Of a DNA stretch of 64,000 nt, positions 29,344 to 61,626 are shown piece after piece. The notes below the pieces were generated by a model that saw only the letters and a program-made list of their open reading frames with translations, had not been told where the DNA came from and did no database searches. Both the position numbers and the translations under genes were made by a program. The stretch is taken from positions 1-64,000 of IMG/VR virus record IMGVR_UViG_3300045256_000050; one strand, written 5' to 3'. The number at the start of each line of letters is the position of its first letter. Positions within the stretch are counted from its first letter, which is position 1.

Positions 29344-29766
29344 ATGCGGGATTTCAATGAGTTCCTTATCGAGAACGACCAGCGGGTGTTCAACGAGATT
29401 TTCGGCAAGATCGCCGGTGCCCTGGGGATGGGCGGGCCGGAGTGGGTCGGCTACCTGAAGAAGCTGTCGGCCACCCCGGAGGGTCCGGTCGCCCAGCAGA
29501 TGCTCAAGATGTTCACTAAAGGCGTGGACCCGAAGGATTACATGTGGGTCAAGCAGAATCAGAACGACGTGTTCCGCTTCCTCCAGAAGCACCGGAACAA
29601 CCTGGAAGGGATGGGTGTGAACGTAGACGGGTTGATTAAGAAGCTGGGAATCTACGACCCGACCGACTTGGCGATCAAGCAGTCCGGCAATGCTGGCTGG
29701 CTCGGCAACCGGAACGTTTCGGCTCACGACAACCACGCCACGGCGAACGTCAAGAGCCTTCGCTAA
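29344..29766 (+). CDS. Hypothetical protein with a capsid-targeting-like N-terminus
   Basis: GGAG RBS; MRDFNEFLIE start. Confidence 0.75.
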   Translation: MRDFNEFLIENDQRVFNEIFGKIAGALGMGGPEWVGYLKKLSATPEGPVAQQMLKMFTKGVDPKDYMWVKQNQNDVFRFLQKHRNNLEGMGVNVDGLIKKLGIYDPTDLAIKQSGNAGWLGNRNVSAHDNHATANVKSLR

Positions 29767-30101
29767 AACCCGTCTCTCTTCCAATTCACCTTTGGCCTAC
29801 AAGTCCTCTCCCAGAAGTACCAACACGTCCGGGCGAGGGCTTGTATGTTTTCCGGCAGTTCTTCGAGCAGGAAGCGGATGTGGTTGATGAGGGTGCAGGG
29901 CCACTCCTGGCAAATCTCCTCGTTCCGCAGGTAGCAGATCAGGACGCCGGGGGTGACGGGTTCGTATTCACCAAAGTCATTCGCCCAGATCGGGCTGTCG
30001 TGCTGGATGGGGTCTTCGACGCCGCCCCAGATCGACCGAACGAGTAGTTGTTCGGGGGTGGTCAGGTCGCAGGAAAAGTCGGGGTGGATCGCTGTGCGCA
30101 T
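29763..30101 (-). CDS. Hypothetical protein
   Basis: Convergent ORF with plausible composition. Confidence 0.65.
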   Translation of the reverse strand: MRTAIHPDFSCDLTTPEQLLVRSIWGGVEDPIQHDSPIWANDFGEYEPVTPGVLICYLRNEEICQEWPCTLINHIRFLLEELPENIQALARTCWYFWERTCRPKVNWKRDGF

Positions 30102-30528
30102 ACCAGGGGCCGTAAGGTGAAAGACAACAGATCATAGTAAAGACTAAATCTCTATCTGTTATAATAGAGAGCGCCCGGTAGGGCGCAGCCTCGACTATGA
30201 CCCATGCACTCAGTAAAGTGCGCATGGCGTCGTACTTCCACAGTCAAGTGGTTTTAAGTAGCTGTTGTGTTTGGGTTTCCAAACCTTCTCCGCTGCACGC
30301 TACCCCGATTGACTAGGCGTGCATTTACGGCATTAAGGGGTGCGGAGTCGGAATACCTCCACCCGGCGATTGGGTCTGAGTCGTCTGGTTACAACTACCC
30401 TGGTCCCCGAAGGGTCGCTAAGGTTTTTCTTCGCCCACCCCCTGGCGGCTACTCGGCCGGGGCTTCGGGCGCACAGTTCCCAGACATCTTAAACAACAAA
30501 TCGGCCCCGTCAACACTACTTTCAAAAT

Positions 30529-31008
30529 ATGCTGACCCAACTCACCGAAAACCACGTTGACGCCGTTCTGGGCATCTGCCAGCAGTGCTACCCCAACCCC
30601 GAGTATTGGGAGACTCGCACCAACGTCATGACTAAGCTGCACAACTACTCGCCGGGCTGCATCGGGTGGGAGGAGGACGGCAAGCTCGTCGCTTACTACC
30701 TGTTCTGGCCGTGGAACAAGGTCCGCTCCTACCCGCTCGACCGGGAGGACTGCTGGCTCAACAACCAGCAGCCGACGGTCATGTACAGCCACGACATCTG
30801 CATACTTCCATCATACCGTGGAAAAGGAATTGCGCAAGAGCTTTTGTCAAGTTACGAAACCCAGGCGAGGGAACTCGGCCTGCGGGTCGGCGTAGGTACT
30901 GCCGTGCGTGGGACTTGGGTGTTGTGGAAGAGATGGGGCTGGGAGCCGGTCGAGCGGGTGAACTACGGCCCGGAAGAGGCGTGGCTAATTTTGAAGTTTC
31001 TCTCTTGA
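30529..31008 (+). CDS. GNAT-family acetyltransferase
   Basis: Motif A 'ICILPSYRGKGIAQELL' and C-terminal 'WKRWGW'. Confidence 0.85.
   Translation: MLTQLTENHVDAVLGICQQCYPNPEYWETRTNVMTKLHNYSPGCIGWEEDGKLVAYYLFWPWNKVRSYPLDREDCWLNNQQPTVMYSHDICILPSYRGKGIAQELLSSYETQARELGLRVGVGTAVRGTWVLWKRWGWEPVERVNYGPEEAWLILKFLS
30845..30860. repeat. Dispersed motif TGTCAAGTTACGAAAC, copy 2
   Basis: Reverse complement of the 27150 and 51823 copies. Confidence 0.85.
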
Positions 31009-31076
31009 CTTCTTGTTACGCTTCTGGTTTATTACACAACTCAAGTTGAAAGTAACGAAACACAAGGAAGTGTAAC

Positions 31077-31811
31077 ATGGCAAAGCTGAACCAGATCATC
31101 GCCGTCGTCAACGGCAAGAAGACCAAGACCCAGAAGCAGGTCACGGACGTTTACCACAACCTCCAGAAGCCGACCTTGTTCGAGGGCATCTCCCGGACCT
31201 ACCGCCCGTCCGACGAGGACGGCGAGACGTTCCCGCCGGAAAAGAAGCTCGTTCAGTACAAGGTGCAGGACGCCGTTCGGGAAGTCCGTGAGGCTCTTAC
31301 GGAACTCTGGGACGTGACCGCAACCCAGGATTGGGCGAACTGCAAGGCCGTCGCCGACGTGAAGGTGGACGGGAAGGTTCTGTTGCTCAAGGTGCCGGTG
31401 ACTCACCTGCTGTTCCTTGAGAAGCAGTTGACCGACCTGCACACGTTCGTGTCCAAGCTGCCGACGCTCGACTCGGCCGAAAAGTGGAACTTCTCCCAGG
31501 AGGCCGACGCCTTCCAGTCCGAGGAGTCCCGCACGAACAAGACCAAGAAGGTCATGCGGAACCACGTCAAGGCTGCGGCCACGGACAAGCACCCGGCCCA
31601 GGTCGATGTCTATACTGAGGACGTGAAGGTGGGCGAGTGGGCCACGATCAAGTTCTCGGGTGCGATCCAGGTCAAGAAGAAGAACGAGATGCTGGAGCGG
31701 GTCGCCAAGCTCCAAGAGGCGGTCAAGTTCGCCCGTGAAGAGGCGAACAACCTTGAGGTCGAAAACCAGTCCGTCGCCGCCCCGGTGCTGGACTTCGTGT
31801 TCGGCAAGTAA
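31077..31811 (+). CDS. Conserved helical hypothetical protein (MAKLNQIIAV family)
   Basis: Strong resemblance to a bacterial conserved family (...ISRTYRP...LLFLEKQL...HPAQV...VKFAREEAN). Confidence 0.9.
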   Translation: MAKLNQIIAVVNGKKTKTQKQVTDVYHNLQKPTLFEGISRTYRPSDEDGETFPPEKKLVQYKVQDAVREVREALTELWDVTATQDWANCKAVADVKVDGKVLLLKVPVTHLLFLEKQLTDLHTFVSKLPTLDSAEKWNFSQEADAFQSEESRTNKTKKVMRNHVKAAATDKHPAQVDVYTEDVKVGEWATIKFSGAIQVKKKNEMLERVAKLQEAVKFAREEANNLEVENQSVAAPVLDFVFGK

Positions 31812-31837
31812 GGCCAGAACAAAATTTGTGACCCAAA

Positions 31838-31874
31838 AACACCCCAGCCGTTGACCCTTGTCCGGCTGGGGTGT
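31838..31874 (+). terminator. Hairpin, possible terminator
   Basis: ACACCCCAGCCG...CGGCTGGGGTGT. Confidence 0.5.
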
Positions 31875-31936
31875 ATCGTTATGAGAACACTCGATGACTA
31901 TCTCGCCCCCGCCATAACGCACTTTGGGTTCCGAAG

Positions 31937-33070
31937 ATGTGGGATGTTTTCACGGATGTCTCTGGGTTCGTTCCTCGCCGAGTCTGCGGTGCCTGGACGA
32001 ACGAGTTGATCGCACTGCATAACGTCTCTGACATTCTGATCGGGGTTTCATATCTCCTCATCCCCCTGTTCATCTGGAAATTCGTCCGGGCGAAACCGGG
32101 GATGAAGTTCTCCCTGATCTTCTACGCCTTCTGTGACTTCATCGTGTCGTGCGGCCTGACACACTTCATGGATGTGGCCCTCTTCTACTGGCCCAACTAC
32201 AGGCTGGCCGGGATCATCAAGCTGGTCTGCGGGGTTGTTTCCTTCAGTACAGTCATCCTGCTGTTCAGAATGTACCCACTCGCCGTCAAGATGATCCAGA
32301 CGCCGAGGGAGATACGGGAGAGGACCGAGACGCTATCCCAGAAGAACGACGCCCTGGAGAAGCAGAACGGGCATCTTGTCTTCGAACAAAAAGCGAAGGA
32401 CGACTTCCTGGCGATCCTCGGCCACGAACTCCGCAACCCACTCGCCGCCGTTTTCAACGCAAAACAACTTCTGGAACGGGACTCGGCCAAGAGCCGGGAA
32501 CTCGGGATGAAGATACTGGAGAACCAGATCGACCACCTGAACCGGCTGGTGGACGACATCATCAACGTCGCTCGTGCCGTCCAGGGTCGGCTGGAGTTGA
32601 GGCAGGACAAAACGTGTGCCCGTCAGATCATCGAGCGGGCGATGGAACTCGCCGCAGCCACCATCAAGAAGCACAAGTGCGTGGTGAGTGTCGAACAACC
32701 GCCGGAAGACCTGTGCTTTGTTGCCGATGAGATGCGCATGGCTCAGGTTGTGAGCAACCTGCTTACCAATGCTGCGAAGTATGGGCACGAAGGCGGCAAA
32801 ATCGAAGTTACTGTTACCTGCGAGGGTGGTATACTCCACCTATCAGTTCGAGATTACGGCATCGGCATCGGGCCGGAGAAGCTGGACACCATCTTCGGAC
32901 TCTGTGTCCGAACGGAACGTGCTGCCAAGAAGGCGGACGGTATGGGCGTCGGACTGGCGATGGTCCGGGCGATTGTCGAGCTTCATGGCGGTCATGTCAG
33001 TGCTAAGAGCAACGGCGTCGAGCAAGGGGCTGAGTTCCTGGTCACGATACCAATCACGGAGGTAGCATGA
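31937..33070 (+). CDS. Sensor histidine kinase with an ethylene-receptor-like 3-TM input domain
   Basis: H-box HELRNPL, N-box NLLTNAAKY, G1 DYGIGI, G2 GMGVGL; N-terminal SDILIGVSYLLIP...FIVSCGLTH resembles the ETR1 ligand-binding domain. Confidence 0.9.
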   Translation: MWDVFTDVSGFVPRRVCGAWTNELIALHNVSDILIGVSYLLIPLFIWKFVRAKPGMKFSLIFYAFCDFIVSCGLTHFMDVALFYWPNYRLAGIIKLVCGVVSFSTVILLFRMYPLAVKMIQTPREIRERTETLSQKNDALEKQNGHLVFEQKAKDDFLAILGHELRNPLAAVFNAKQLLERDSAKSRELGMKILENQIDHLNRLVDDIINVARAVQGRLELRQDKTCARQIIERAMELAAATIKKHKCVVSVEQPPEDLCFVADEMRMAQVVSNLLTNAAKYGHEGGKIEVTVTCEGGILHLSVRDYGIGIGPEKLDTIFGLCVRTERAAKKADGMGVGLAMVRAIVELHGGHVSAKSNGVEQGAEFLVTIPITEVA

Positions 33071-33408
33071 ACATCGTCCTTGTAGAAGACCACGACGACA
33101 TCGCCGACTCCAGCATGATGCTTCTCGATATGCTCGGGCATCAAGTCACGAGGGTGAAGACGGGCCTGGAAGCTGTGGAGTTGGCGAAGTCGGTGGTGCC
33201 TGACTGCTTCATCGTGGACATTGGCCTTCCCGACATCCCCGGCACCGAGGTTTGTAAGCGAATCCGCTGCCAGCCCGCTCATTACAAAACGCTGATGGTG
33301 GCGGTGAGCGGCTACGACATCAGCAACGAGGCGAAGGAGATCGGCTTCGATCAGGCGTTCAAGAAACCCGTCGATTACACCCGTCTCTTCCCGGCCGTCA
33401 CGAACTAA
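33067..33408 (+). CDS. Single-domain response regulator (CheY-like)
   Basis: VEDHDD, DIGLPD, SGY and KPV receiver motifs; ATGA overlap with the kinase. Confidence 0.92.
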   Translation: MNIVLVEDHDDIADSSMMLLDMLGHQVTRVKTGLEAVELAKSVVPDCFIVDIGLPDIPGTEVCKRIRCQPAHYKTLMVAVSGYDISNEAKEIGFDQAFKKPVDYTRLFPAVTN

Positions 33409-33412
33409 ACGA

Positions 33413-33447
33413 AAGAACCCCCGGTGATGCCGGGGGTTCTTCCTTTT
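33413..33447. terminator. Bidirectional terminator
   Basis: AAGAACCCCCGG-tgatg-CCGGGGGTTCTT between convergent genes. Confidence 0.75.
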
Positions 33448-33458
33448 GGGAACTCCGC

Positions 33459-40890: not shown

Positions 40891-41314
40891 TCTTGAACGA
40901 CTTCCAGTGAATGTACTCGATCCGCTCCGGGTTCCACTCGTCGTCGAGCAGCGTAAGTACGATACTTTCTTCGTGGGCCAACAGGCCCATCGCACAGTAT
41001 TCCGGCACCAGGACGGAGTTGTTCGTGTCCAGGTCAACCGTGTAGGTGTTATTAAACGTGTCCGAGTCGTCCCGGAGATCGACGACGGCCAGGAACACCC
41101 CGCCCCGGACGACGTGGACGAGCCGCTGGCTGTTGAGCCGGTGCAGCCCCTTCACCGTGCCGCTGCCCAGGTAATCGACCGTCACCCCGACGGGGAACAT
41201 GTGTTCCATTACGGAACTGCGGTAGAGTTCGAAGGAACCGCTGTGCTGTTGTTCGACGTACTCGTGTTCGATGTAAAGCAAGTTTGCGATCTGATCGACT
41301 TCTTCCTTTTTCAT
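40814..41314 (-). CDS. dTDP-4-dehydrorhamnose 3,5-epimerase-like cupin (divergent RmlC)
   Basis: 'GTVKGLH...VVRGGVFLAVVDLRDDSDTF...VLVPEYCAMG...IKWP'. Confidence 0.75.
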   Translation of the reverse strand: MKKEEVDQIANLLYIEHEYVEQQHSGSFELYRSSVMEHMFPVGVTVDYLGSGTVKGLHRLNSQRLVHVVRGGVFLAVVDLRDDSDTFNNTYTVDLDTNNSVLVPEYCAMGLLAHEESIVLTLLDDEWNPERIEYIHWKSFKIKWPKRKRYLLNDADRSAPQWSARP

Positions 41315-41351
41315 GGCTCCCTCCATAGATAGTATAAAGGAAAAAGTCAAT

Positions 41352-42434
41352 ATGTCCAAGTCATTTACTGATTATGTTTATCGGCGACTCCTCAGTGAAG
41401 TGGAGGACGTGGGTGCCGCTACGGAAGCCCCCGCTCCTGGCGAGGACACGGTGGCCGAGAAGAAGCAAAAGGTCAAGAACGTGCAGGCGGGGTTCGCCCA
41501 GGCACGGGAAGAACTCTCGAAGATGGTGGACGCCAAGTTCGCCGAACTCGAAGGCCAACTCCAGCGGTCGTTCGGCTCGCAGCAGAAGATCAACTCCGTG
41601 GACCGGGCGAAGATCGTTCAGGTGTTAGGTAAGATCGCCGACAAGATTAACAGTTGGGGCGACAGCGACCAGGACGTTCAGTACGCCGCCCCGGCAGCGG
41701 AACAAGTGCCGACCCGTGTCCCGCCGGTCGCCGCAGAAGGCATCCGGGCGGTCAACGGGTTGCTGATCGAGGCCGAGTTGTACGTCGAGGACAACCACGG
41801 CATGAAGATTCAGTCGGTGAAGTCGTACCTGCAAAAAGTGAAGGCCGAGATCATGCAGCAGGTGGACAACACGCTGCGGGCGTTGCAGAACGACGCCGTG
41901 ATGAAGATGATGAACGACATCCACAAGAGCGTGTCCACCGTCCAGGGCATCGTCAGCGGCCAGTCGCCGTTGAACGCCACGGAGAAGATCGACGCCTACC
42001 ACAACCTACAACAGTTGGGTAACACGATTGCGATGTCGGCCGCTCCGAAGCTGAAGTTCGGCGAGCGGCTGCCGAAGTCCACCAGCCCGGTGCAGATCAT
42101 CCTCGGCGGCGGGCACGTCCTGAACTTCAACCCGTCCGACCGTGACTCGATCCAGGCGGCGATGGGCAAGTTGCGTAACCCACGGGCCGTCAAGATCAAG
42201 GTCGGTGATCGGGTCGAGACGGTGGACATCTCGAACAAGCAGCAGATGGCCGACATCATTTCCGCCGCTCAGGAGGCGATGGAGATGGGCGGGCAACAAC
42301 TGGCGGCGGCGAACAAGGTGGCGGCTCAGCCGAACGACCCGCTGAAGGCGGCTCGCCAGCCACGGAAGAAGATGTTCCCGACTCCGGCAAAGCCGTCGAT
42401 GCCGGTCGCCCTCGGGCCGGGCGTTGGTGAGTAA
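41352..42434 (+). CDS. Helical protein with a capsid-targeting-like N-terminus
   Basis: AAGGA RBS; MSKSFTDYVYRRLLSE start; TAGATA upstream. Confidence 0.8.
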   Translation: MSKSFTDYVYRRLLSEVEDVGAATEAPAPGEDTVAEKKQKVKNVQAGFAQAREELSKMVDAKFAELEGQLQRSFGSQQKINSVDRAKIVQVLGKIADKINSWGDSDQDVQYAAPAAEQVPTRVPPVAAEGIRAVNGLLIEAELYVEDNHGMKIQSVKSYLQKVKAEIMQQVDNTLRALQNDAVMKMMNDIHKSVSTVQGIVSGQSPLNATEKIDAYHNLQQLGNTIAMSAAPKLKFGERLPKSTSPVQIILGGGHVLNFNPSDRDSIQAAMGKLRNPRAVKIKVGDRVETVDISNKQQMADIISAAQEAMEMGGQQLAAANKVAAQPNDPLKAARQPRKKMFPTPAKPSMPVALGPGVGE

Positions 42435-43111: not shown

Positions 43112-43423
43112 ATGTTGCACCTGTTTGGTTGGTTGATTTACGGCCTGATCGTGGGCTGGATTGCAAAGAAGCTTCACCCAGGTGAAGACCCGGTAGGGTT
43201 CCTACCGACCCTGGGCATCGGCGTGGCTGGCTCTTACGTCGGTGGGTTCTTGAACTGGATGCTCGGCTACGGCGGCAGCCCGATCTCGTCGTCGGGCCTC
43301 ATCATGGGTATCATCGGCGGCGTGATCTGCTGCGTGATCTACCGCCAAGTAAAGATTCAGCAGTTCGTTAAGATTCAGGGCCGTGCGCCCCGGATGTTTG
43401 TCCCGAAAAGTGAGCAGAAATAA
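43112..43423 (+). CDS. GlsB/YeaQ/YmgE (transglycosylase-associated) membrane protein
   Basis: 'WLIYGLIVGWIAK.L.PG...TLGIGVAGSYVGG' signature. Confidence 0.88.
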   Translation: MLHLFGWLIYGLIVGWIAKKLHPGEDPVGFLPTLGIGVAGSYVGGFLNWMLGYGGSPISSSGLIMGIIGGVICCVIYRQVKIQQFVKIQGRAPRMFVPKSEQK

Positions 43424-44048
43424 GGTCTAGCATCTGCTTGCCGATTTCCGAACCCTTCAGCCCCGTCAGGTAGTTCCTGTGCGACTGGTTGAAGGGTTCT
43501 TCTTTTACCATCATCTCGGCCAGCCGGGGTAGGAACCGCATCCCCGGATACTTCTTTTTGTACGCCTCGGCGATCTCCCGTGCGTAGGCCCGCATCTCGC
43601 CCGGATCGGACAGGTAGTCCACCGGGTCTTCGTGGCTCTGGCCGGGGAAGAAGATGTGTTCCACTTCATGCTCGACGGCACTGAGCAACTTCTTCACGCC
43701 CTCGTCCGGGTTTTTGTCCACAAGCCGGGCGTTGAACGTCATGCCGGAGAACTCGCCGTTGTTGTGTTGGGTGCTGGCGGTGACGTGCGGGTCGTTAATC
43801 TGGGCAAACTGCACCGGCTTCCCCATGATCCCGTGCCCGAGTTCTTTCGGAAACAGGAGGGTGTTGCCCCGCTGTGCGTCTTTCGGCCAGACGGCTTTGA
43901 GATAGACAATAAACGGACGGCGGGCTTGATCCCTCTTGAGTTGGGAGTAAGCCTGTCGTATCATGTTGCTTAAGAAGCTGGCGACCTGCCCCGAGAGGGA
44001 CTGGTAGTCCTCGTTCAGTTTGCGAGCCAAAAACCGGGTGAATGTCAT
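43368..44048 (-). CDS. HExxH zinc-metallopeptidase-like protein with a capsid-targeting-like N-terminus
   Basis: HEVEH and 'YLSDPGEMRAY'; MTFTRFLARKLNE start. Confidence 0.75.
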   Translation of the reverse strand: MTFTRFLARKLNEDYQSLSGQVASFLSNMIRQAYSQLKRDQARRPFIVYLKAVWPKDAQRGNTLLFPKELGHGIMGKPVQFAQINDPHVTASTQHNNGEFSGMTFNARLVDKNPDEGVKKLLSAVEHEVEHIFFPGQSHEDPVDYLSDPGEMRAYAREIAEAYKKKYPGMRFLPRLAEMMVKEEPFNQSHRNYLTGLKGSEIGKQMLDLISAHFSGQTSGAHGPES

Positions 44049-46491: not shown

Positions 46492-48141
46492 GTGAACCGT
46501 TGGAACAAGTTCTACATCACCACCGCCATTGACTACCCGAACGCCCTCCCGCACAACGGCACGGCGTTCGAGAAGATCGGTGCCGACGTGCAGGCCCGGT
46601 TCCGCCGGTTCTGCGGCTTCCACCCGTTCCTCCTGATGGGGAACGACGAGAACACCGTTAAGGTGGTCAAGGCCACGCCCGAAGGGCTGACGACGCAAGA
46701 GTACGTCGATAACATGGCCGTCGCCTTCATGCACGAGTGGCAGAAGCTCGGCATCGACTACTCGGCCTTCCTCCAGACCAGCAAGGACCGGCACCGGCAG
46801 GGCGTCGAGAAGTTCATCAACGCCGTCTGGGCCAGCGGCTACATCGAGAAGCGGCCGTACACCGCCCTGTACTGCGAGGGGTGCGAGGAATTCAAGACCC
46901 CGAAGTCGCTCGACTACGCCAAGCGGTGCCCGCACCACCAGAACACCCCGGTCGTGGAAGTGACCGAGGAGAACTACTTCTTCAAGTTGTCGGCCTTCAA
47001 GGACCGGCTGCTCGACTACTACAAGAAGGCGGAAATCTTCCCGGAGGCCCGCCGCAACGAGATGCTTGACTTAGTGCAGACCGAACTGCACGACATGAGC
47101 ATCAGCCGTTCGAGCCGGGGCTGGGGCATCCCGGTGCCGTTCGACACGACGCAGACGATCTACGTCTGGTTCGACGCCCTCCTGAGCTACCTGACCGGCG
47201 TCGGGTTCGGCTGGGATTGGGGGATGTTCAAGAACCTCTGGCCCGCCGACGTGCATGTGATCGGGAAGGACATCACCCGGTTCCACTGCACCCTCTGGCC
47301 TGCGATGATTATGGCCTACAACGAGGTAGTGCAGAACCAGCACTCCATCGGCCTCGCCGAAGAACTGCCCGTGATCGACCTGCCGAAGCAGGTGTTTTCC
47401 CACGGCTTCATCTACCGGAAGAAGGGGCACGAACTCGTCCGGGAGTCGAAGACGGACGCCGAGTCGAACCTGGGGCCGCTCGTCGAGGAGTTCGGGGCCG
47501 AGGCGTACCGCTACTACTTCATGGCGAAGTGCCCGTTCGGTGCGGACGGCGAGTACAGCAGGGACCACATTCGGGAAGTGTACAACGCCGACTTGGCGAA
47601 CAACCTGGGGAACTTGGTCAACCGCTCCATCCAGATGATCGTGAAGTACGGCGGCGGGAAGTTGCCGTTCGGCAAGACGGAGAAGGTCTGGCTCGACCCG
47701 AAGACGATGACCGACTTCCGCACCGACATGGCGTTGTTCAACTACCGAGCCGCCCTGACGACCATCTGGAACATCCTGCACCGGGCGAACGAGTACATCG
47801 AGGCGAACAAGCCCTGGGAGTTGACAAAGACCGACCAGGGCAAGTGCCTGGACGTGCTGAGGGAACTCGTCGCCGCCCTGCGGATCGTGTCCCTGATGCT
47901 CAAGCCGTTCATGCCGGGGACTGCGGCCAAGATCGCCGTGGCTCTCGGTCTGAAGGACTGGCCGAACATGACCTTCGGAGACTTGGCCCGGATCGCTCAC
48001 TACAACGGAGATGGGCTGGGTGAGGTTCAAGTCGAACCCATCCAGCCGCTCTTTCCTCGTTCTGTCGCCCCGGTCCAAAAAGAACCGAAAGGACCGGGTA
48101 AGGTCAAAGGCACGCCGGGAACTGAACCGGCTGCTGGCTGA
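46492..48141 (+). CDS. metG: Methionyl-tRNA synthetase (short form) with variant signature motifs
   Basis: YITTAIDYPN, CxxCE knuckle, YVWFDAL, IGKDI.RFH, N.DLANNLGNL.NR; HIGH appears as HNGT, KMSKS as RESKT. Confidence 0.93.
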   Translation: MNRWNKFYITTAIDYPNALPHNGTAFEKIGADVQARFRRFCGFHPFLLMGNDENTVKVVKATPEGLTTQEYVDNMAVAFMHEWQKLGIDYSAFLQTSKDRHRQGVEKFINAVWASGYIEKRPYTALYCEGCEEFKTPKSLDYAKRCPHHQNTPVVEVTEENYFFKLSAFKDRLLDYYKKAEIFPEARRNEMLDLVQTELHDMSISRSSRGWGIPVPFDTTQTIYVWFDALLSYLTGVGFGWDWGMFKNLWPADVHVIGKDITRFHCTLWPAMIMAYNEVVQNQHSIGLAEELPVIDLPKQVFSHGFIYRKKGHELVRESKTDAESNLGPLVEEFGAEAYRYYFMAKCPFGADGEYSRDHIREVYNADLANNLGNLVNRSIQMIVKYGGGKLPFGKTEKVWLDPKTMTDFRTDMALFNYRAALTTIWNILHRANEYIEANKPWELTKTDQGKCLDVLRELVAALRIVSLMLKPFMPGTAAKIAVALGLKDWPNMTFGDLARIAHYNGDGLGEVQVEPIQPLFPRSVAPVQKEPKGPGKVKGTPGTEPAAG

Positions 48142-48633: not shown

Positions 48634-48651
48634 TTTCGCCTACATAGAAGC

Positions 48652-49305
48652 ATGTTAAGCTTCCGTGCATGGTTTGAAGTCAACTACCCGAAAGAACTCG
48701 ACGATTTCGACCCGACTGATTTCGCCGGTCGGGAAGCCTCCATTCAGCAGAGGATGAAGGAGAAGGGCGAGGACTGGTTCACCGCCGGTTCCGCCCCGAC
48801 GGACTACAAGGTCCGCCGAGCCGAAGTCATCAAAGCCTGGAACCACATCGTCAAGACCCTATTCCCCGGCGGTGAGTTCACCGGCAACCTGGACACGGGT
48901 CCGGGCAACGTGATGAACTACAGCATCAAGATGGGGCCACGGGGCGTCATCTTCTCTCTTCACGAAGACAAGTACGGCAAGAACCTGTACGCCACGGTGG
49001 ACTTCGGCTGGGACGAGATGCCCGCAGAGTTGAGCCAGAAGGACGCTGACAACGTGAGCGGCGGGGACGCCAACGTAGCCGCTAAGAGCGTTCAGCCGGG
49101 GTCCATGACTTTCATGCGTACCCTGGAGCGGTACGCTGCGGCCTGCCAGAAGTACGGCATCCGGTTCATCTTCAACGCCTCGGACGAGGGCGACACGTCA
49201 CGCCGGGTGCCGGTGTACGGGAAGGTGTTGAAGCGGGCGGGCTACGAGCCGGTGAATGTTTACCGCCGCCGTAACACATTCAAGCCAGCCGGAAGCACCT
49301 ACTGA
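48652..49305 (+). CDS. Hypothetical protein with a capsid-targeting-like N-terminus
   Basis: MLSFRAWFE start; CTACATA immediately upstream. Confidence 0.8.
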   Translation: MLSFRAWFEVNYPKELDDFDPTDFAGREASIQQRMKEKGEDWFTAGSAPTDYKVRRAEVIKAWNHIVKTLFPGGEFTGNLDTGPGNVMNYSIKMGPRGVIFSLHEDKYGKNLYATVDFGWDEMPAELSQKDADNVSGGDANVAAKSVQPGSMTFMRTLERYAAACQKYGIRFIFNASDEGDTSRRVPVYGKVLKRAGYEPVNVYRRRNTFKPAGSTY

Positions 49306-55418: not shown

Positions 55419-55420
55419 TG

Positions 55421-57046: not shown

Positions 57047-57095
57047 AATTTCCTGTTTTGCCGCATAGATAAGATACTCACTATAGGAGAGCGAT

Positions 57096-57347
57096 ATGGC
57101 CGTAAAAGATTTCTACGAATGGTGCAAGGAAAACAACCTTGACCTGAGCCTCGAAGCCACTCACAAGGAGCCGGTTCGTGGCATGAAGAAGGCACCGAAC
57201 AAGGACAAGTTCAACGGTCCTCGTGACCAGCGTGACGACCTGTCCGCCGACTACAAGGGCCACGTTGCCATGAACGGCACCGTCGAGCCGTACAAGGTCG
57301 TTGCTAAGGGCAAGGGCGGTAAGGCCGTTGCTCCGGTTGCTGGCTAA
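57096..57347 (+). CDS. Small protein with a capsid-targeting-like N-terminus
   Basis: AGGAG RBS; MAVKDFYEWCKE; TAGATA upstream. Confidence 0.75.
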   Translation: MAVKDFYEWCKENNLDLSLEATHKEPVRGMKKAPNKDKFNGPRDQRDDLSADYKGHVAMNGTVEPYKVVAKGKGGKAVAPVAG

Positions 57348-57354
57348 GGTGTGA

Positions 57355-58146
57355 TTGATGAAGAAGTGGCTCTGTGCGTTAGCACTGGTGCTGGCGGCTA
57401 CGGCCTCCGGCGTACTGCTTCTTAGTCGTCTTGCTGATGTACAGCAGCAGGTGGCTGAGCCGGAGCCGATTCGCACATTCCCTGCACTCAATTTAGAGCC
57501 GTTCCAGGTTCTATACGCTAACGAGCGGTTGACCGAGTACACCGCAGCGTACACCAGTCAGGACGGCGAAGAGGAAGTAAAAGACATTCAGTGCCCGATC
57601 CCCATGAAGGATCGGGTCTTCAATAAGACTGGTATTCAATGTGTGTATGCTTCAACTGAGATGATCGGGAGATGGGCCGAGGAACCGAAGCTCATGAACC
57701 CGCCTCTCACCAGTAGACCTGAATGTAAAAGCTACTCTTCGCCTTCCCGACTGGCGCAAGTTCTCAACAGTCTCAAAGTCAAATACGAACAGAGTTACGG
57801 TAAGCGTGACGAGGGCCGTGCCCTGATCCGAAAGGCAATGGCCGAGGGCCGTGGCTGCCTGTGGGGCGTGCCCGGTCACGCAATGGTCATCGTCCATTGG
57901 GACGAGGCTAAGAACGTATTCAAGTGGGTGGACAACTCCGACCGTTCACTGAAGGTACAGACCGGAACCATCCAGCAGTTCGAGCGGCGGTGGGACAGTT
58001 GGATTTGCGTGGTTTACGCAGACAACGACATCATCCCGCAGAAGATGAACAAGACCACCCTGCCGAATCAAATCCCCATCAAGGACCGGAATGGCGTTCA
58101 GGGCAAGTACCCGAACGACTACATCCCGTCCCCGCAGAAGAAGTAA
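57355..58146 (+). CDS. Membrane-anchored papain/C39-like cysteine peptidase
   Basis: QCVYAS (Cys), GHAMV (His), VDNS. Confidence 0.7.
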   Translation: MMKKWLCALALVLAATASGVLLLSRLADVQQQVAEPEPIRTFPALNLEPFQVLYANERLTEYTAAYTSQDGEEEVKDIQCPIPMKDRVFNKTGIQCVYASTEMIGRWAEEPKLMNPPLTSRPECKSYSSPSRLAQVLNSLKVKYEQSYGKRDEGRALIRKAMAEGRGCLWGVPGHAMVIVHWDEAKNVFKWVDNSDRSLKVQTGTIQQFERRWDSWICVVYADNDIIPQKMNKTTLPNQIPIKDRNGVQGKYPNDYIPSPQKK

Positions 58147-59070
58147 TCAAGCGTTTGCCACGAGTTCCACGGACGTGATCCGGTTGATGCCGGTTGCGGA
58201 CTCGAACCGTACTCGCATGAAGTTAATCTCCAGCCGGTCGAACGCCGTGACCGGAGTCCATGTCCACTCCACCACCGAGTACGAACCTGTCGTGGCCGAC
58301 GAGAACGATTGGCTGCGTGGCGTGAAGCCCGGAGCTTCCACGACGAGGCTGGCCCCGATGAGGGCCGGGGCCGACGTGTTCTTCACGCAGATACGGAGCG
58401 TGACCGAACTGTAAGATTGCGGCGTGCCGTCCGGGAGAACGTCGAAGGCGAACTCCTGGGTGGTGTTCGTGTCGTCGTAGATGTAGCTGCCGTCGCCGTC
58501 GTTGGCGTCCACGGGCGTGCGAATCTTCTCCCACTTGTGGCCCATCGCCGGGACACGCTTCCAGCCGGTGCCGGGGGCGGTGATGATGTTCGCCCCCAGG
58601 TCGTCGTTGGGCCGCAGGGTGAACGGCGGGCCGAGGAGGAAGTCCCGGACATCCGTGATGTTCTGGATGGCCCGCAGGGCGGTGCGGGAGTGACGGCCCG
58701 GATTGAGGGTCATCCGCTCGGCGATGTCGTAGAGTTCGTCCACAGCGTTGACGTTGAGCCATGTGGCACTCGTGTTCATGGCGAGGTACGGGACGCTGTT
58801 ACGATAAATCTGTAGGTTGTAGACGTTATCGTTGTTCATGACCGTCTGGCTGAGCCGGTATTCCCAGAGGACTTGTGGGCGGTACGGGTCGGTGCAGATG
58901 GTCAGGTCACGCTCGTAGGCGTAGTATTCCCCTGGCGCAACGAGCGACCAGTTGACGCCGAAGAGTTCGGTCTTCATGATGAGTTCCCGGACCAGCATCT
59001 CGTTGTACAGGAAGTCGAGTTCCTTCTTGTTGTTCTGGTCGATGGGAAGACTAGGAATTCTTTGGCTCAT
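58147..59070 (-). CDS. Hypothetical, probable virion protein
   Basis: Long ORF with a beta-rich C-terminal domain. Confidence 0.75.
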   Translation of the reverse strand: MSQRIPSLPIDQNNKKELDFLYNEMLVRELIMKTELFGVNWSLVAPGEYYAYERDLTICTDPYRPQVLWEYRLSQTVMNNDNVYNLQIYRNSVPYLAMNTSATWLNVNAVDELYDIAERMTLNPGRHSRTALRAIQNITDVRDFLLGPPFTLRPNDDLGANIITAPGTGWKRVPAMGHKWEKIRTPVDANDGDGSYIYDDTNTTQEFAFDVLPDGTPQSYSSVTLRICVKNTSAPALIGASLVVEAPGFTPRSQSFSSATTGSYSVVEWTWTPVTAFDRLEINFMRVRFESATGINRITSVELVANA

Positions 59071-59365
59071 ATATCATTTCTCTCAGGAAGATTCGGTAAC
59101 ACTTGCTGTACGCCTGCCCCCAGGCGGCACCGTGGGTGTAGTTCCCCGGCTTGTCCCAGGCCAGGACGTGTGCCATCTCGTGAATTAGCGTCTCTAGGGC
59201 AAGTTCTTCGGAAAGGTCTTTACTGATGCGGATGCGAAATGTGCCGTCTTCGAGCTTCAGGCAGTCGCCGTGGCAGTCTTGGGGAACACGCACCCGTCTG
59301 ACCGAGAATGTATACTCGGGCAAACACCGCCGGTACATGTTTACGACCTTCCTAAATTGCCCCAT
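59051..59365 (-). CDS. SprT-like HExxH metalloprotein
   Basis: LIHEMAHV...HGAAW. Confidence 0.8.
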   Translation of the reverse strand: MGQFRKVVNMYRRCLPEYTFSVRRVRVPQDCHGDCLKLEDGTFRIRISKDLSEELALETLIHEMAHVLAWDKPGNYTHGAAWGQAYSKCYRIFLREMIYEPKNS

Positions 59366-59403
59366 GAGAGGTATTTAGGAAGGTCGTGATGGGAAATCAG
59401 AAG

Positions 59404-60054
59404 TTACAGCTTAACGTGGTAGACCTTGACTAATAACGGGTCCAGTTCGGCTTGGAGTTCACCGAACGAGACGACGTGTTCGTCCCGGTCTTCCCAGATG
59501 TGAATCTCTTCCAGGTCCGTCCAGAGGGCAACGAACTGGTCGATAATCCACTTCTTCCACGGGAAGGTTTCCTGTGGCTTCGGACCTTTTGCCAGCTTAA
59601 TAGCCGGACCGTCGTTCCCGAGGAGGAACAACTGTACCTTCGGATCGACCCACCGGAAAGTACCGTTACCGACCTTCTCGACCTGGGCGAGCTTCCCGTC
59701 GTGGATGACCCGGTAGACTTGCTGGGCAAGCCCAGCGTGTCGGCCGGTCATGATGACGGTCGCCCGTTCGGGGTCGGCGGCGGACTTCCTCAATGCCTCC
59801 ACGGTTTCCGTGATGAACCACTCCGGCGTCAGCGGGTCCGGGCAGAGCGGCGGTTGCATCGTCTCCGCACGCCCGTACCAGCCCTGCCGCATCGGAATGA
59901 ACTTCCCGTGCTTTGCCGACAGTTCCTTCGACAAGCTCTTGGAGATTGCCCAGGGGATGCCGGTAGCCTTCTCGTATTGCTTACGAGTTTCGGGGGTATC
60001 GACGGGGTTCTTCCACAGAGTCCCGTCGAGATCGAAGATGTCTAAGTATTTCAT
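59404..60054 (-). CDS. HAD-superfamily phosphatase (Swiss-Army-Knife RNA-repair-like HAD)
   Basis: FDLDGTL, MTGR, WKK and WEDR motifs. Confidence 0.8.
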   Translation of the reverse strand: MKYLDIFDLDGTLWKNPVDTPETRKQYEKATGIPWAISKSLSKELSAKHGKFIPMRQGWYGRAETMQPPLCPDPLTPEWFITETVEALRKSAADPERATVIMTGRHAGLAQQVYRVIHDGKLAQVEKVGNGTFRWVDPKVQLFLLGNDGPAIKLAKGPKPQETFPWKKWIIDQFVALWTDLEEIHIWEDRDEHVVSFGELQAELDPLLVKVYHVKL

Positions 60055-60105
60055 GACGGCACCCGTGGTCATCGAGGTTTTAGCTCAATATACCACGGGC
60101 GTCGG

Positions 60106-61626
60106 TTATTGTAAAGACTTCCGCAGGAGCGACCGGAACATTTGCAGTTCCATCTCCCGCTTCTTCTGAGTTGCGTCTTCAGTGCGGAGTTGACCGGAGA
60201 ACGGGTCTTTGAGGGACGCAAAGGCGTCGGTCACTTCACCGTTACCGTTGATCGGCTCGACTCTTGGGGAGTTGAGGTAGGCCACGAATGCGTCGGCCAA
60301 GCTGTCGGGTTTGCCGCCGACCTTCGTCAACCACGCCCGAATCTTTCGGGTCGGAACGCCCGAAGTCATGATGGCGTCCGTCATTTCGGCGAGCGAGTTA
60401 GCGTCCACTTCCGGGGACAGGCCCAGGGTCTTCACCAAAACAACGATCTTCTTCACGTCTTCCGGGCGGACGCCTTCGAGTTGTCGGACGATCACGCCTT
60501 CCGGCAACTTCTGCATCATCCACGCAATCGGGGCGTGGCGGTCGCCGATCTCCCGCAGGCCGCTCGGCATCTCCATGTTCAGGTCGCCGCCCACTTCTGG
60601 TGGGAACAGGTGATCCGTAACACCGAGAACGCTCAGGAGCTTCAGGAACTTCCGGGGGTCGATGTCCTCGTAGCCCATGCCCTTCATGAACTCGTCCATA
60701 GCGGCCTTTCGGTCCACCTTAGCGAGCAGCGGGGCAGCCTTGCGGATCATCTCGGTTTCTTCGTCGCTGATGGACGCCGGATCGCCGTAGCGGGCCATCA
60801 TCCGGGCGAACCGGAGGATACGCATCGGGTCTTCACTGAACTTGGCGTCGAACCCGCCGATGGGCGAGATACGACCGGCCTTCAGGTGGTGGAGTCCGCC
60901 GAAGAAGTCGCTCAGTTCCTTGTTCGGGCCGTTGTCGTTGCCGAGCAACAGGTACATCGAGTTGATGGTGAAGTCACGGCCAGCCGCATCGTCTGCGTGC
61001 GTGCCGTTCATGATGTCGCCCTCTTTGCTCCGGGTGAACACGCTCAGGTCGAACTCGTCGTTGCGAACCTTAACACCGAAGCTGTACGGACGACCGCCGG
61101 AGTCCTTCTTCTTCACCCAGAACACCTGCTGAGCGGCCGGTTGTTCGCCGCCGAGTCCGCCCGCCTGCATGGACGAGTTCGGGCCGTTGTCCGGCTGGCC
61201 GTTCTCGCCGATGAACTTGAACTTGTTCTGGGTGAGGATGTGGTACACTTCGTCGGGGCTGGCGTCCGTCACCAGTTCGATGTGACGGGGCTTGCGGCCC
61301 GTCAGGTGGTCACGGAGCGCACCGCCGGTCAGGTACAGTTTCTTGCTGCCCACCTTGACCGGCTTGTCCTCGCCCGTCTTCGGGTCTTTGCTCCAGCCCC
61401 AATTCGCACTCTTCTTGAAAGCTCGCACGAGCGGTGCGAGATTCTTGTTCTTCCCGAAGTGTTCGGAGTTCGTGTCGTCGGAAACGGTAAAAGGCGGCAG
61501 GTCGTTGCCGTCGCCCAGGGAGATTCGTGAAGTCAACGGCTCCTCGCCAGCACCACCGGCACTGCCGAGGCCGTTTCTCGCCTTCTGTTCTTCGACGAAT
61601 TCCCGGAATGTTCTCTTCTTTAGCAT
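60106..61626 (-). CDS. CCA-adding enzyme/poly(A) polymerase family protein with a substituted catalytic DxD
   Basis: GGALRDHL, RDFTINSM, EDPMRILR; the DxD position reads H-I-E. Confidence 0.85.
   Translation of the reverse strand: MLKKRTFREFVEEQKARNGLGSAGGAGEEPLTSRISLGDGNDLPPFTVSDDTNSEHFGKNKNLAPLVRAFKKSANWGWSKDPKTGEDKPVKVGSKKLYLTGGALRDHLTGRKPRHIELVTDASPDEVYHILTQNKFKFIGENGQPDNGPNSSMQAGGLGGEQPAAQQVFWVKKKDSGGRPYSFGVKVRNDEFDLSVFTRSKEGDIMNGTHADDAAGRDFTINSMYLLLGNDNGPNKELSDFFGGLHHLKAGRISPIGGFDAKFSEDPMRILRFARMMARYGDPASISDEETEMIRKAAPLLAKVDRKAAMDEFMKGMGYEDIDPRKFLKLLSVLGVTDHLFPPEVGGDLNMEMPSGLREIGDRHAPIAWMMQKLPEGVIVRQLEGVRPEDVKKIVVLVKTLGLSPEVDANSLAEMTDAIMTSGVPTRKIRAWLTKVGGKPDSLADAFVAYLNSPRVEPINGNGEVTDAFASLKDPFSGQLRTEDATQKKREMELQMFRSLLRKSLQ

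What the first reader, a model, noticed from the sequence alone, without database searches (positions are those of the whole stretch)
29344..61626. Six unrelated proteins share a T4-like capsid-targeting N-terminus
Seen: MRDFNEFLIE (29344), MSKSFTDYVYRRLLSE (41352), MTFTRFLARKLNE (44048, minus), MLSFRAWFE (48652), MAVKDFYEWCKE (57096) and MLKKRTFREFVEE (61626, minus) share (S/T/D)-F-x-x-(F/W/Y)-x-x-x(n)-E, and most follow a TANATA motif. Known: T4 internal proteins begin with a capsid-targeting sequence (MKTYQEFIAE type) that is cleaved after Glu by the prohead protease. Inference: these proteins are packaged in the head and injected, including a metallopeptidase-like protein and the CCA-enzyme homolog.
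Basis: partly seen in the sequence, partly recalled or inferred. Interest (0 to 1): 0.6.

Follow-up and report, generated by a model that had tools for sequence, protein, structure and literature searches.

The report
T4-type capsid address tags, expanded
A 245-kb uncultured hot-spring phage with a T4-type head puts the same short N-terminal tag that phage T4 uses to load proteins into its capsid on at least 14 unrelated late proteins (about 55 in a 595-kb relative), which suggests that these huge phages inject a large protein kit with their DNA.

Summary
All six proteins start at the stated codons with M-x(1-5)-F-x-x-[F/W/Y]-hydrophobic...E. A scoring matrix trained only on a relative (LR756511, 595 kb) finds 14 such N-termini in this 245-kb genome against 0.37 expected (up to 19 by eye) and 57 in the relative. 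T4 has 3, XacN1 5, RSL1 0 and phiKZ 1.

The tagged proteins are unrelated beyond the tag. Orthologues at 28-58% identity keep it, as do 117 of 119 homologues of the CCA-enzyme-like protein.

The conserved positions are the ones shown by experiment to matter in T4 IPIII. The aromatic pair (Tyr4, Phe7) is needed for targeting. The hydrophobic-x-Glu (Ile8, Glu10) is needed for cleavage.

The genome encodes a T4-type portal, a gp21-type protease, a scaffold-like protein, a gp23 capsid protein and a gp55-like late sigma factor. A TANATA box, the 3' core of T4's TATAAATA late promoter, precedes 14 of 19 tagged genes against 42 of 322 others (p = 1.4e-8). In the relative p = 7e-25.

Packaging, cleavage and injection remain inferred, because there is no cultured relative and no RNA or proteome data. 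The metallopeptidase label rests on an HExxH motif alone. Verdict: a new variant of a known system, of fairly high interest.

The parts
29344..29766 (+). Gene for a 140-aa protein of unknown function. Tag MRDFNEFLIE occupies 29344-29373 (Phe4, Phe7, then L-I-E10).
   Evidence: Translation. Start agreed by the gene caller. PSSM 13.0 bits. No Pfam or PHROG family. IMG/VR holds only an identical copy.
29313..29318 (+). TAGATA late-promoter-like box, starting 31 nt before the start codon of 29344. A GGAG Shine-Dalgarno site follows.
41352..42434 (+). Gene for a 360-aa protein of unknown function. Tag MSKSFTDYVYRRLLSE occupies 41352-41399 (Phe5, Tyr8, then L-S-E16).
   Evidence: PSSM 10.0 bits. No family.
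41326..41331 (+). TAGATA box, starting 26 nt before 41352. It lies downstream of the alternative ATG at 41313, which favours 41352 as the start.
43368..44048 (-). Gene for a 226-aa protein with an HEVEH motif. Tag MTFTRFLARKLNE occupies 44010-44048 (Phe3, Phe6, then L-N-E13).
   Evidence: PSSM 9.0 bits. In three homologues of 83-89% identity the only varying tag residues are 8-10. In the AF2 model (mean pLDDT 67) the tag is the start of a long N-terminal helix. No fold match.
48652..49305 (+). Gene for a 217-aa protein of unknown function. Tag MLSFRAWFE occupies 48652-48678 (Phe4, Trp7, then W-F-E9).
   Evidence: PSSM 13.6 bits. Aligned with four homologues and the 28%-identical paralogue at genome 203378-203863, the invariant N-terminal columns are M1, F4, W7 and E9.
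48641..48646 (+). TACATA box, starting 11 nt before the start codon, with no Shine-Dalgarno site. This is the leaderless class of late genes.
57096..57347 (+). Gene for an 83-aa protein. Tag MAVKDFYEWCKE occupies 57096-57131 (Phe6, Trp9, then C-K-E12). It has a paralogue at genome 191280-191507(-).
   Evidence: PSSM 12.9 bits. Orthologues start MVKTFMQWAEE, MKNFIEWCKE and MLDFIEWCVL in LR756511 and on contigs of 667 and 622 kb.
57066..57071 (+). TAGATA box, starting 30 nt before 57096. An AGGAG Shine-Dalgarno site follows.
60106..61626 (-). Gene for a 506-aa protein like a tRNA nucleotidyltransferase (CCA enzyme or poly(A) polymerase). Tag MLKKRTFREFVEE occupies 61588-61626 (Phe7, Phe10, then F-V-E12). 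After the tag comes a linker of variable length, then the nucleotidyltransferase domain.
   Evidence: PF01743 at 7.5e-15. phrog_2244 at 3.4e-30. PSSM 18.0 bits. 117 of 119 full-length homologues (45-93% identity) have aromatic-x-x-aromatic in the first 16 residues. The first Glu follows with Leu or Phe at P3 in 98 of 119. The linker to the conserved LGDGN motif varies from 15 to 40 residues.
59404..60072 (-). Neighbouring gene for a HAD_SAK_1 phosphatase of the RNA-repair kind. It forms a conserved pair with the CCA-like gene. It has no tag here but has one in LR756511 (MNLNFRQYVE).
   Evidence: Synteny.

Best explanation
The shared N-termini are capsid-targeting sequences of the T4 kind.

Proposed mechanism:
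1. The tagged genes are transcribed late, from gp55-type TANATA promoters.
2. The first 8-16 residues form a short amphipathic helix. Its two aromatic side chains, three residues apart, dock the protein onto the scaffolding core of the assembling prohead.
3. After the gp23 shell closes, the gp21-type prohead protease cuts after the first hydrophobic-x-Glu, which is residue 8-13 in most carriers. This frees the mature protein inside the head.
4. The protein stays with the packaged DNA and enters the host with it at the next infection.

Shown here:
- The motif exists, sits strictly at the N-terminus, is under selection, and is carried by unrelated proteins.
- It matches the T4 determinants position by position.
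- A T4-type head-assembly gene set is present.
- The tagged genes are linked to late-promoter-like boxes.

Inferred: docking to the core, cleavage, retention in the head and injection.

The cargo is mostly small proteins of unknown function, as with the T4 internal proteins. It also includes an RNA-repair-type nucleotidyltransferase, so a reasonable further guess is a pre-loaded anti-defence and takeover kit.
For: 1. Specific enrichment at N-termini. This genome has 14 hits against 0.37 expected, and the relative has 57. Controls: RSL1 0/313, phiKZ 1/355, T4 3/264, XacN1 5/545.

2. Match to the functional map of the T4 tag. In IPIII (MKTYQEFIAE), residues 4 and 7 carry targeting and residues 8 and 10 carry processing (PMC9026906; tag sequence also in PMC8442874). 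Here the fixed positions are the aromatic pair at i and i+3, then hydrophobic-x-Glu. The first Glu lies within 6 residues of the second aromatic in 79-86% of carriers, against 31-39% of other proteins. P3 is mostly W, L, F, Y or I. This Glu comparison is partly circular, because the matrix that selects the carriers already rewards Glu 2-3 residues after the second aromatic.

3. The matrix, trained on the huge phage, picks out T4 IPI in the T4 genome.

4. T4-type head genes lie in T4 order: gp20 portal (PF07230), a 610-aa unknown protein, Peptidase_S77 (6.6e-26), a 307-aa helical Glu-rich scaffold-like protein with 24 hydrophobic-x-Glu sites, and Gp23 (7.5e-84). The capsid protein's own propeptide aligns T4's L-T-E|A cut site with M-N-E|A here and F-N-E|I in the relative.

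5. The carriers are unrelated. The tag codons differ (47% mean nucleotide identity), so selection acts on the peptide.

6. The tag outlasts divergence. Orthologues at 29-58% identity keep it. In one paralogue pair at 28% identity, F4, W7 and E9 are invariant. 117 of 119 CCA-like homologues keep it while the linker behind it varies freely.

7. Late-gene context. TANATA lies within 60 nt upstream of 14/19 tagged genes against 42/322 others (p = 1.4e-8). In the relative the figures are 45/57 against 144/972 (p = 7e-25), and TAAATA is the most enriched hexamer in an unbiased search. The same box precedes the tail sheath gene, a tail-fibre-like gene and the head-module gene, and a gp55-like late sigma factor is encoded.

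8. None of the 44 small genes of the putative early block (1-17.5 kb) carries the tag.
Against: - There is no direct evidence of packaging or cleavage. No cultured relative exists (best capsid-protein match among cultured phages is 33% identity). No RNA runs hold the sequence. No virion proteome exists.
- The complex prediction of scaffold with tag could not be run.
- The scaffold assignment rests on gene position and composition only; it matches no family.
- The matrix is not perfectly specific. It also hits the DNA primase of the relative, where the aromatic pair belongs to the zinc-ribbon domain.
- In the 57096 family, conservation continues past the tag.
- Some carriers have the first Glu far from the tag, or a poor P3 residue.
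- The mature parts are not markedly basic, unlike T4 IPII and IPIII, and one is extremely acidic (net charge -62).
- That TANATA is a late promoter is itself inferred from T4 and from the genes it precedes.
- The early-block test has little power: about 2 carriers would be expected, and 0 were seen.
Confidence: 0.65

Rival explanations
1. The tag is a docking helix for some other common partner, not the prohead core. Candidates are a phage or host chaperone, a cytoplasmic protease or adaptor that times degradation, or a hub protein. The likeness to the T4 tag would then be convergence on a generic amphipathic aromatic helix.
For: The motif is short and of a common helical type. The cargo is not basic as in T4. 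Some carriers are enzymes that would also be useful late in the cytoplasm.
Against: The match extends to the processing half of the T4 tag, hydrophobic-x-Glu at residue 8-13, which a mere docking helix does not need. Enrichment is seen in phages with T4-type heads and is absent in RSL1 and phiKZ. The tagged genes share late promoters with structural genes.
Confidence: 0.15
2. The set is mixed. Only some of the N-termini are true targeting tags. The others (for example the 57096/191507 family, 41352 and 44048) have an aromatic N-terminal helix that belongs to their own fold and are not packaged.
For: The primase is a clear false positive of the matrix. The 57096 family is conserved beyond the tag. 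41352 and 44048 score lowest of the six (10.0 and 9.0 bits). In the AF2 model of the 44048 protein, the tag runs on into a 37-residue helix.
Against: Only 0.4 hits are expected by chance in this genome, and the control genomes give 0-1, so false positives should be few. In homologues of the 44048 protein, the varying tag residues are just those between the aromatic pair and L-N-E.
Confidence: 0.15
3. The signal acts at the nucleic-acid level, as a shared 5' coding element for translation start on late, often leaderless, mRNAs, or as a recombination cassette copied together with the promoter.
For: Many tagged genes have a promoter box 10-11 nt before the start codon and no Shine-Dalgarno site. 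On such mRNAs the first codons could matter for initiation.
Against: The tag codons vary freely: Ser is TCA, AGC or AGT, Thr is ACA or ACG, Phe is TTC or TTT, and mean nucleotide identity is 47%. The same peptide motif is kept in genomes of 58% and 42% G+C. Tagged genes with a normal Shine-Dalgarno leader have it too. Most leaderless late genes lack the tag.
Confidence: 0.03
4. Chance, or an artefact of wrongly called starts.
For: Starts are predicted, not measured. The motif is short.
Against: The enrichment is 38-fold with a matrix trained on another genome. It is replicated in the relative, in three further contigs and in 119 database homologues. Control genomes give 0-1 hits. The six starts are the first or best-supported starts.
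Confidence: 0.01

Closest known systems
[quoted passage not shown]
   Same: - A tag of 9-19 residues strictly at the N-terminus of otherwise unrelated, mostly small, late proteins.
- An aromatic pair three residues apart (T4 Tyr/Phe4 and Phe7), followed by hydrophobic-x-Glu.
- The phage encodes a gp21-type protease that cuts after Glu, and a gp20/gp22/gp23-type head.
- Tagged genes are often in small tandem groups.
   Different: - The consensus is F-x-[E/D/Q]-[W/F/Y] with Trp common, not Y-Q-E-F.
- The spacing between Met and the first aromatic varies (1-5 residues).
- There are 14-19 carriers here and about 55 in the relative, against three in T4 and about ten kinds across the T-evens.
- Carriers include large proteins (up to 1121 aa) and an RNA-repair-type enzyme.
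- The mature parts are not notably basic.
- The lineage is very distant (capsid protein 28.5% identical to gp23).
- Nothing has been shown biochemically.
[quoted passage not shown]
   Same: Short N-terminal propeptides ending in L-x-E. The large subfamily of the CCA-like proteins ends its tag in ...K-L-L-R-E, the same L-L-R-E as the gp24 sequence read from the T4 genome.
   Different: gp24 lacks the aromatic pair and is a shell protein, not cargo.
Long propeptides of the ejection and inner-body proteins of phiKZ-like giant phages (phiKZ, 201phi2-1, SPN3US; PMC5694885)
   Same: Many different proteins are loaded into a large head and trimmed after Glu by a gp21-related protease. The cargo includes enzymes.
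   Different: Those propeptides are 80-275 residues long, with no shared short tag and an (S/A/G)-x-E cut site. phiKZ gives only 1 hit in 355 proteins with the matrix used here.
CCA-adding enzyme / poly(A) polymerase family (PF01743), as part of 'Swiss Army Knife' RNA-repair gene sets with HAD_SAK_1
   Same: The protein at 60106-61626(-) has the nucleotidyltransferase head domain and sits next to a HAD_SAK_1 phosphatase. The pairing is kept across the clade.
   Different: It has an extension of about 130 residues before the catalytic domain, which begins with the tag and a variable linker. Its activity and substrate are unknown.

Membership tests
T4-type capsid targeting sequence | Short leader (about 10-19 residues) at the extreme N-terminus of the precursor | tested here: met
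   The motif starts at residue 3-7. The first Glu after it is at residue 8-13 in 12 of 14 carriers here and in 48 of 57 in the relative. Internal windows give 0.1% hits.
T4-type capsid targeting sequence | Targeting determinants: aromatic residues at the positions of IPIII Tyr4 and Phe7 (i and i+3) | tested here: met
   All six proteins, and all 14-19 carriers, have [F/Y]-x-x-[F/W/Y]. The T4 map is taken from PMC9026906. T4 sequences were read from NC_000866.
T4-type capsid targeting sequence | Processing determinants: hydrophobic residue at P3 and Glu at P1 (IPIII Ile8 and Glu10) | tested here: met
   P3 of the first Glu is L, F, W or M in 10 of 14 carriers here, and W, L, F, Y, I or V in 46 of 57 in the relative. 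In the CCA-like family it is L or F in 98 of 119. A minority deviate, for example C-K-E in 57096.
T4-type capsid targeting sequence | Carried by proteins with no other similarity to each other | tested here: met
   Only one homologous pair among the 19 once the first 16 residues are removed.
T4-type capsid targeting sequence | The phage encodes the gp21-type prohead protease and a gp20/gp23 head | tested here: met
   PF03420 at 6.6e-26, PF07230 at 5.7e-70 and PF07068 at 7.5e-84, lying in T4 gene order.
T4-type capsid targeting sequence | A gp22-type scaffolding core for the tag to bind | tested here: inconclusive
   The 307-aa gene between the protease and capsid genes is helical and Glu-rich, has 24 hydrophobic-x-Glu sites, and is conserved in the relative (44% identity). 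It matches no Pfam or PHROG family.
T4-type capsid targeting sequence | Made late, while proheads assemble | tested here: inconclusive
   This is indirect. The tag is strongly linked to TANATA boxes, which also precede tail and head genes, and a gp55-like sigma factor is encoded. There are no expression data.
T4-type capsid targeting sequence | The protein is found in proheads and virions, its leader is removed by the protease, and it is ejected into the host | not testable with these tools
   The phage is uncultured, from hot-spring and microbial-mat metagenomes. No proteome exists.
CCA-adding enzyme / poly(A) polymerase (PF01743) | Nucleotidyltransferase head domain | tested here: met
   PF01743 at 7.5e-15, above the curated cut-off. 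phrog_2244, tRNA nucleotidyltransferase, at 3.4e-30.
CCA-adding enzyme / poly(A) polymerase (PF01743) | CCA-adding activity on tRNA 3' ends, as opposed to poly(A) or another nucleotidyltransfer | not testable with these tools
   Family membership does not fix the substrate. The HAD_SAK_1 neighbour points to RNA repair.
Zincin metallopeptidase (protein at 43368-44048) | HExxH zinc-binding motif in an active-site helix that follows a beta-sheet | tested here: inconclusive
   HEVEH at residues 127-131 lies in helix 114-133, after four strands, in a model of mean pLDDT 67.
Zincin metallopeptidase (protein at 43368-44048) | Recognisable similarity in sequence or fold to a known peptidase family | tested here: not met
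   No Pfam or PHROG hit. The best Foldseek E-value is 1.6, with only weak rows for minigluzincins. VIA-align gives no peptidase, best Z 5.9.

The most novel reading that the evidence does not exclude
The T4 capsid address tag is an ancient, portable label shared across the whole T4-like head lineage. One clade of huge phages, with contigs up to 667 kb, has used it to pre-load the capsid with dozens of different proteins. The load includes an RNA-repair pair (a CCA-type nucleotidyltransferase and, in some members, a HAD phosphatase). These would be delivered with the DNA as a ready-made kit that counters host defences, for example tRNA-cutting nucleases, before any phage gene is expressed. If so, the injected proteome of uncultured huge phages can be read directly from their genomes.
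Probability: 0.4. Interest if true: 0.78.

Novelty: new variant of a known kind. Interest (0 to 1): 0.63.

Why it matters
Proteins injected with phage DNA act before any phage gene is read. In T4, all three internal proteins turned out to be inhibitors of host restriction enzymes (PMC12373910).

If the tag works here as it does in T4, a simple N-terminal pattern lists the injected proteins of an uncultured huge-phage clade. That list has 14-19 proteins in this genome and about 55 in a 595-kb relative, nearly all of unknown function. It is a short list of candidate anti-defence and takeover factors, and it goes some way to answering what huge phages do with their extra genes.

It would also show that the T4 tag is much older and more widespread than the T-even phages in which it was defined. 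And it would offer new tags, tolerant of high G+C and possibly of heat, for loading foreign proteins into capsids.

In the searchable literature I found no paper that links capsid targeting sequences with metagenomic huge phages. That library is incomplete.

Tried and rejected
- **Relatives by DNA.** Megablast of 8.5 kb of the window against phage records found nothing.
- **Relatives in IMG/VR.** The search for related loci with the 44048 and 29344 proteins found only an identical 80-kb IMG/VR contig of the same phage.
- **Family scans.** Pfam and PHROGs found no family for five of the six proteins, nor for ten further tagged proteins.
- **Word-based homologue searches.** Only close relatives (76-89% identity) turned up for the 44048 and 48652 proteins. 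This search cannot see distant relatives, so it does not show that none exist.
- **Fold of the 44048 protein.** The AF2 model has mean pLDDT 67. Foldseek against PDB gave no significant match and VIA-align wide gave none. The peptidase label is therefore not confirmed.
- **ESM Atlas.** No usable hit for the 1121-aa tagged protein.
- **Expression.** No RNA run holds the sequence, so read laying was not used and no transcript starts could be checked.
- **XacN1 virion proteome (PMC5852040).** The paper's text names a chitinase (ORF272) as packed in virions. An upstream ATG in that gene would give MKNNPFIKWFE behind an AATAAATA box, but the deposited start is 24 codons further down and the matrix score is -1.5. 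I treat this as inconclusive and do not count it as evidence.
- **Basic charge of the cargo, as in T4 IPs.** Not seen.
- **Not used.** No genetic code other than table 11 was used.

Full report
**What the window is.** The window is the first 64 kb of a single 244,986-bp virus contig with 58% G+C. It comes from hot-spring and microbial-mat metagenomes. An IMG/VR contig holds an identical piece of it. It has no near relative among deposited phage records. Its capsid protein is 75% identical to that of the uncultured 595-kb phage LR756511.1 and at most 33% identical to that of any cultured phage, such as XacN1, cyanophages or T4.

**Checking the observation.** I called genes with a codon-usage model trained on the genome, which gave 341 genes.

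Reading all 341 N-termini shows that the six are part of a larger set. About 19 proteins begin M-x(1-5)-[F/Y]-x-x-[F/W/Y]-hydrophobic and reach a Glu soon after.

To avoid fitting a pattern to the data it is tested on, I fetched the whole of LR756511 and called its 1,038 genes. It holds about 55 proteins that begin MKTFxEWLE-like. I trained a 9-column scoring matrix on that genome alone. Applied to this genome, the matrix gives 14 N-termini at 8 bits or more, against 0.37 expected from 11,200 internal windows.

The same pipeline gives these rates elsewhere:

| Genome | N-termini at 8 bits or more |
|---|---|
| This genome | 14/338 |
| LR756511 | 57/1029 |
| T4 | 3/264 |
| XacN1 | 5/545 |
| Ralstonia phage RSL1 (same size and G+C, head not T4-like) | 0/313 |
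| phiKZ | 1/355 |

**Are the carriers unrelated, and is the signal in the peptide?** With the first 16 residues removed, only one pair among the 19 is homologous by BLASTP. The codons that encode the tag differ freely, with 47% mean nucleotide identity. The same peptide pattern is kept in genomes of 58% and 42% G+C. So selection acts on the peptide and not on a DNA cassette or an mRNA element.

**Conservation.**
- Five carriers have orthologues in LR756511 at 29-58% identity, and each orthologue has the tag. In one case it is kept although the flanking N-terminal region does not align.
- The 48652 protein was aligned with four homologues and with its 28%-identical paralogue. M1, F4, W7 and E9 are invariant, while a 26-residue gap follows directly behind them.
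- The CCA-enzyme-like protein has more than 120 homologues of 45-93% identity, on contigs up to 667 kb. Of the full-length ones, 117 of 119 have the aromatic pair in the first 16 residues. The first aromatic is Phe in 110.
- In that family the first Glu comes 2 or 5 residues after the second aromatic, with Phe or Leu at P3 (F-V-E or L-R-E) in 98 of 119. The linker to the first conserved motif of the enzyme varies from 15 to 40 residues.
- Three further contigs (667, 622 and 275 kb) keep the gene pair of CCA-like enzyme and HAD phosphatase. On the two largest contigs, tagged orthologues of the 57096 and 64133 proteins lie next to it.

**What the tag resembles.** I read the T4 genome itself. IPII and IPIII begin MKTYQEFIAE, IPI begins MKTFKEFTSTTTPVSTITE, and gp24 begins MAKINELLRE. 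The matrix trained on the huge phage picks out IPI.

The literature states that MKTYQEFIAE is the capsid targeting sequence and that it is cut off once inside the head (PMC8442874). Amber-suppressor mutagenesis of IPIII placed targeting at residues 4 and 7 and processing at residues 8 and 10 (PMC9026906). Those are Tyr4 and Phe7, the aromatic pair three residues apart, and Ile8 and Glu10, the hydrophobic-x-Glu. These are exactly the positions that are fixed in the present motif.

Here the first Glu after the motif falls at residue 8-13 in most carriers, with W, L, F, Y or I at P3.

**Is the machinery present?** The genome has the following genes, in T4 order:
- a gp20 portal, which here is interrupted by an intein
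- a 610-aa protein of unknown function
- a Peptidase_S77 (gp21-type) protease
- a 307-aa helical, Glu-rich protein with 24 hydrophobic-x-Glu sites, which I take to be the scaffold
- a Gp23 capsid protein

The whole module is syntenic in LR756511. Aligning the capsid propeptides puts T4's L-T-E|A cut site opposite M-N-E|A here and F-N-E|I in the relative. This fits a protease that accepts hydrophobic-x-Glu.

**Timing.** TANATA occurs only 138 times on both strands of the genome, yet 56 genes have it within 60 nt upstream in the sense direction. Those include 14 of the 19 tagged genes against 42 of the 322 others (odds ratio 18.7, p = 1.4e-8). Four of the six window genes have an exact box, and the other two have near-matches.

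In LR756511, an unbiased hexamer search upstream of tagged genes returns TAAATA, TATATA and TAGATA as the top words. TANATA precedes 45 of 57 tagged genes against 144 of 972 others (p = 7e-25).

TAAATA is the 3' core of T4's late promoter TATAAATA; this is established knowledge about T4. The box also precedes the tail sheath gene, a tail-fibre-like gene and the head-module gene, and a gp55-like late sigma factor is encoded. None of the 44 small genes of the block at 1-17.5 kb, which looks like the early region, has the tag or the box. That early-block test has little power on its own.

**Mechanism proposed.** The tagged proteins are expressed late. The amphipathic N-terminal helix docks to the scaffolding core through the two aromatic side chains. 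The shell closes, and the gp21-type protease cuts after the first hydrophobic-x-Glu. The mature protein is kept in the head and ejected with the DNA.

Shown here are the motif, its selection, its position-by-position match to the T4 determinants, the head gene set and the promoter link. Docking, cleavage, retention and injection are inferred. I put the probability at 0.65.

**Rivals.**
- The tag docks to another partner (0.15). This does not explain the conserved Glu site or the restriction to phages with T4-type heads.
- The set is mixed, with some non-tags among the six (0.15). The DNA primase of the relative is a proven false positive of the matrix. In the 57096 family, conservation runs past the tag. 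In the AF2 model of the 44048 protein, the tag continues into a long helix.
- The signal acts at the mRNA level (0.03). This is contradicted by the codon variation.
- Chance or wrongly called starts (0.01).

**The cargo.** Most carriers are small, with a median of about 130 aa in the relative, and have no known family. This is also true of the T4 internal proteins.

The protein at 60106-61626(-) is a PF01743 nucleotidyltransferase with an N-terminal extension of about 130 residues that starts with the tag. Its neighbour is a HAD_SAK_1 phosphatase of the RNA-repair kind, which itself carries a tag in LR756511 but not here. Injected RNA-repair enzymes that pre-empt host nucleases acting on tRNA are an attractive idea, but it is untested.

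The 'metallopeptidase-like' protein has an HEVEH motif in a helix that follows a small sheet, but it has no family or fold match. The label is unconfirmed.

**Comparison and novelty.** This works like the T4 capsid targeting sequence and meets every defining feature that sequence can test. The biochemical features are untestable here.

It differs from T4 in several ways:
- the consensus (F-x-x-W is common)
- the variable offset from the initial Met
- the scale, with 14-19 and about 55 carriers against three in T4 and about ten kinds among the T-evens (PMC12373910)
- the cargo, which includes enzymes and proteins of up to 1121 aa
- the lineage, a deep branch of T4-like huge phages

It also differs from the phiKZ-like phages, whose cargo carries long, dissimilar propeptides (PMC5694885).

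I found no paper that links capsid targeting sequences to metagenomic huge phages. I rate this a new variant of a known kind, with interest 0.63.

**Limits.**
- No RNA or proteome data exist.
- Gene starts are predictions.
- The large profile search was not used.

Noticed in passing
window 17945, 25694(-), 48652, 50702; genome-wide 15 genes; LR756511 52 genes: There is a class of apparently leaderless late genes. The TANATA box starts exactly 10-11 nt before the start codon, and these genes lack a Shine-Dalgarno site (mean score 0.16, against 2.25 for genes with the box further upstream). By T4 spacing, transcription would start at or next to the ATG. T4 itself has no such class.
   Followed up: partly
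L010:489-3065 (genome 118489-121065): The gp20-type portal gene is 858 aa long and carries an intein splicing domain (PF14890) ahead of the Portal_T4 domain. The portal of LR756511 is the same length (857 aa) and 59% identical along its whole length.
   Followed up: no
window 59404-61626 (-); L056, L057, L058: The CCA-type nucleotidyltransferase and the HAD_SAK_1 'Swiss Army Knife' RNA-repair phosphatase form a conserved gene pair on huge-phage contigs of 275-667 kb. A ClpP-like protease gene and, on two of the three contigs, a histidine-phosphatase gene lie within about 10 kb.
   Followed up: partly
window 46492-48141 (+): The phage encodes a full-length methionyl-tRNA synthetase (PF09334 at 7.5e-72, with the anticodon-binding domain).
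   Followed up: no
L007:16665-17912 (genome 200665-201912) and L010:3568-5400 (genome 121568-123400): A 415-aa tagged protein has a D/E/G-rich tract of about 270 residues (net charge -62), followed by Lys-rich repeats of the form KK-x-P-x-F-x-KKG. The same kind of repeat occurs in the 610-aa protein encoded between the portal and protease genes. This hints that both are head-core components.
   Followed up: no
T4 genome NC_000866: 18966-19130(-) and 114210(+): T4 gene 61.1 (54 aa, MKTFKEFIKE...) and a 76-aa open frame at 114210 (MLLEFKQFLYE...) have N-termini as CTS-like as those of the internal proteins. As far as I know, they are not listed among the T4 internal proteins.
   Followed up: no
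window 1-17500 (+): A block of 44 small genes (median 98 aa), all on the + strand, has no TANATA box and no tagged protein. It is probably the early region.
   Followed up: partly
LR756511 242240-243133 (-): The 595-kb relative has a second, diverged copy of the prohead protease (297 aa, 37% identical to this phage's protease) far from its head module. This recalls the protease paralogue described in SPN3US (PMC5694885).
   Followed up: no
L008:6688-7665 (genome 210688-211665, -): A 325-aa protein behind a TANATA box matches phrog_3677, 'protease', at 3.6e-76. It is a further late protease-like gene of unknown role.
   Followed up: no
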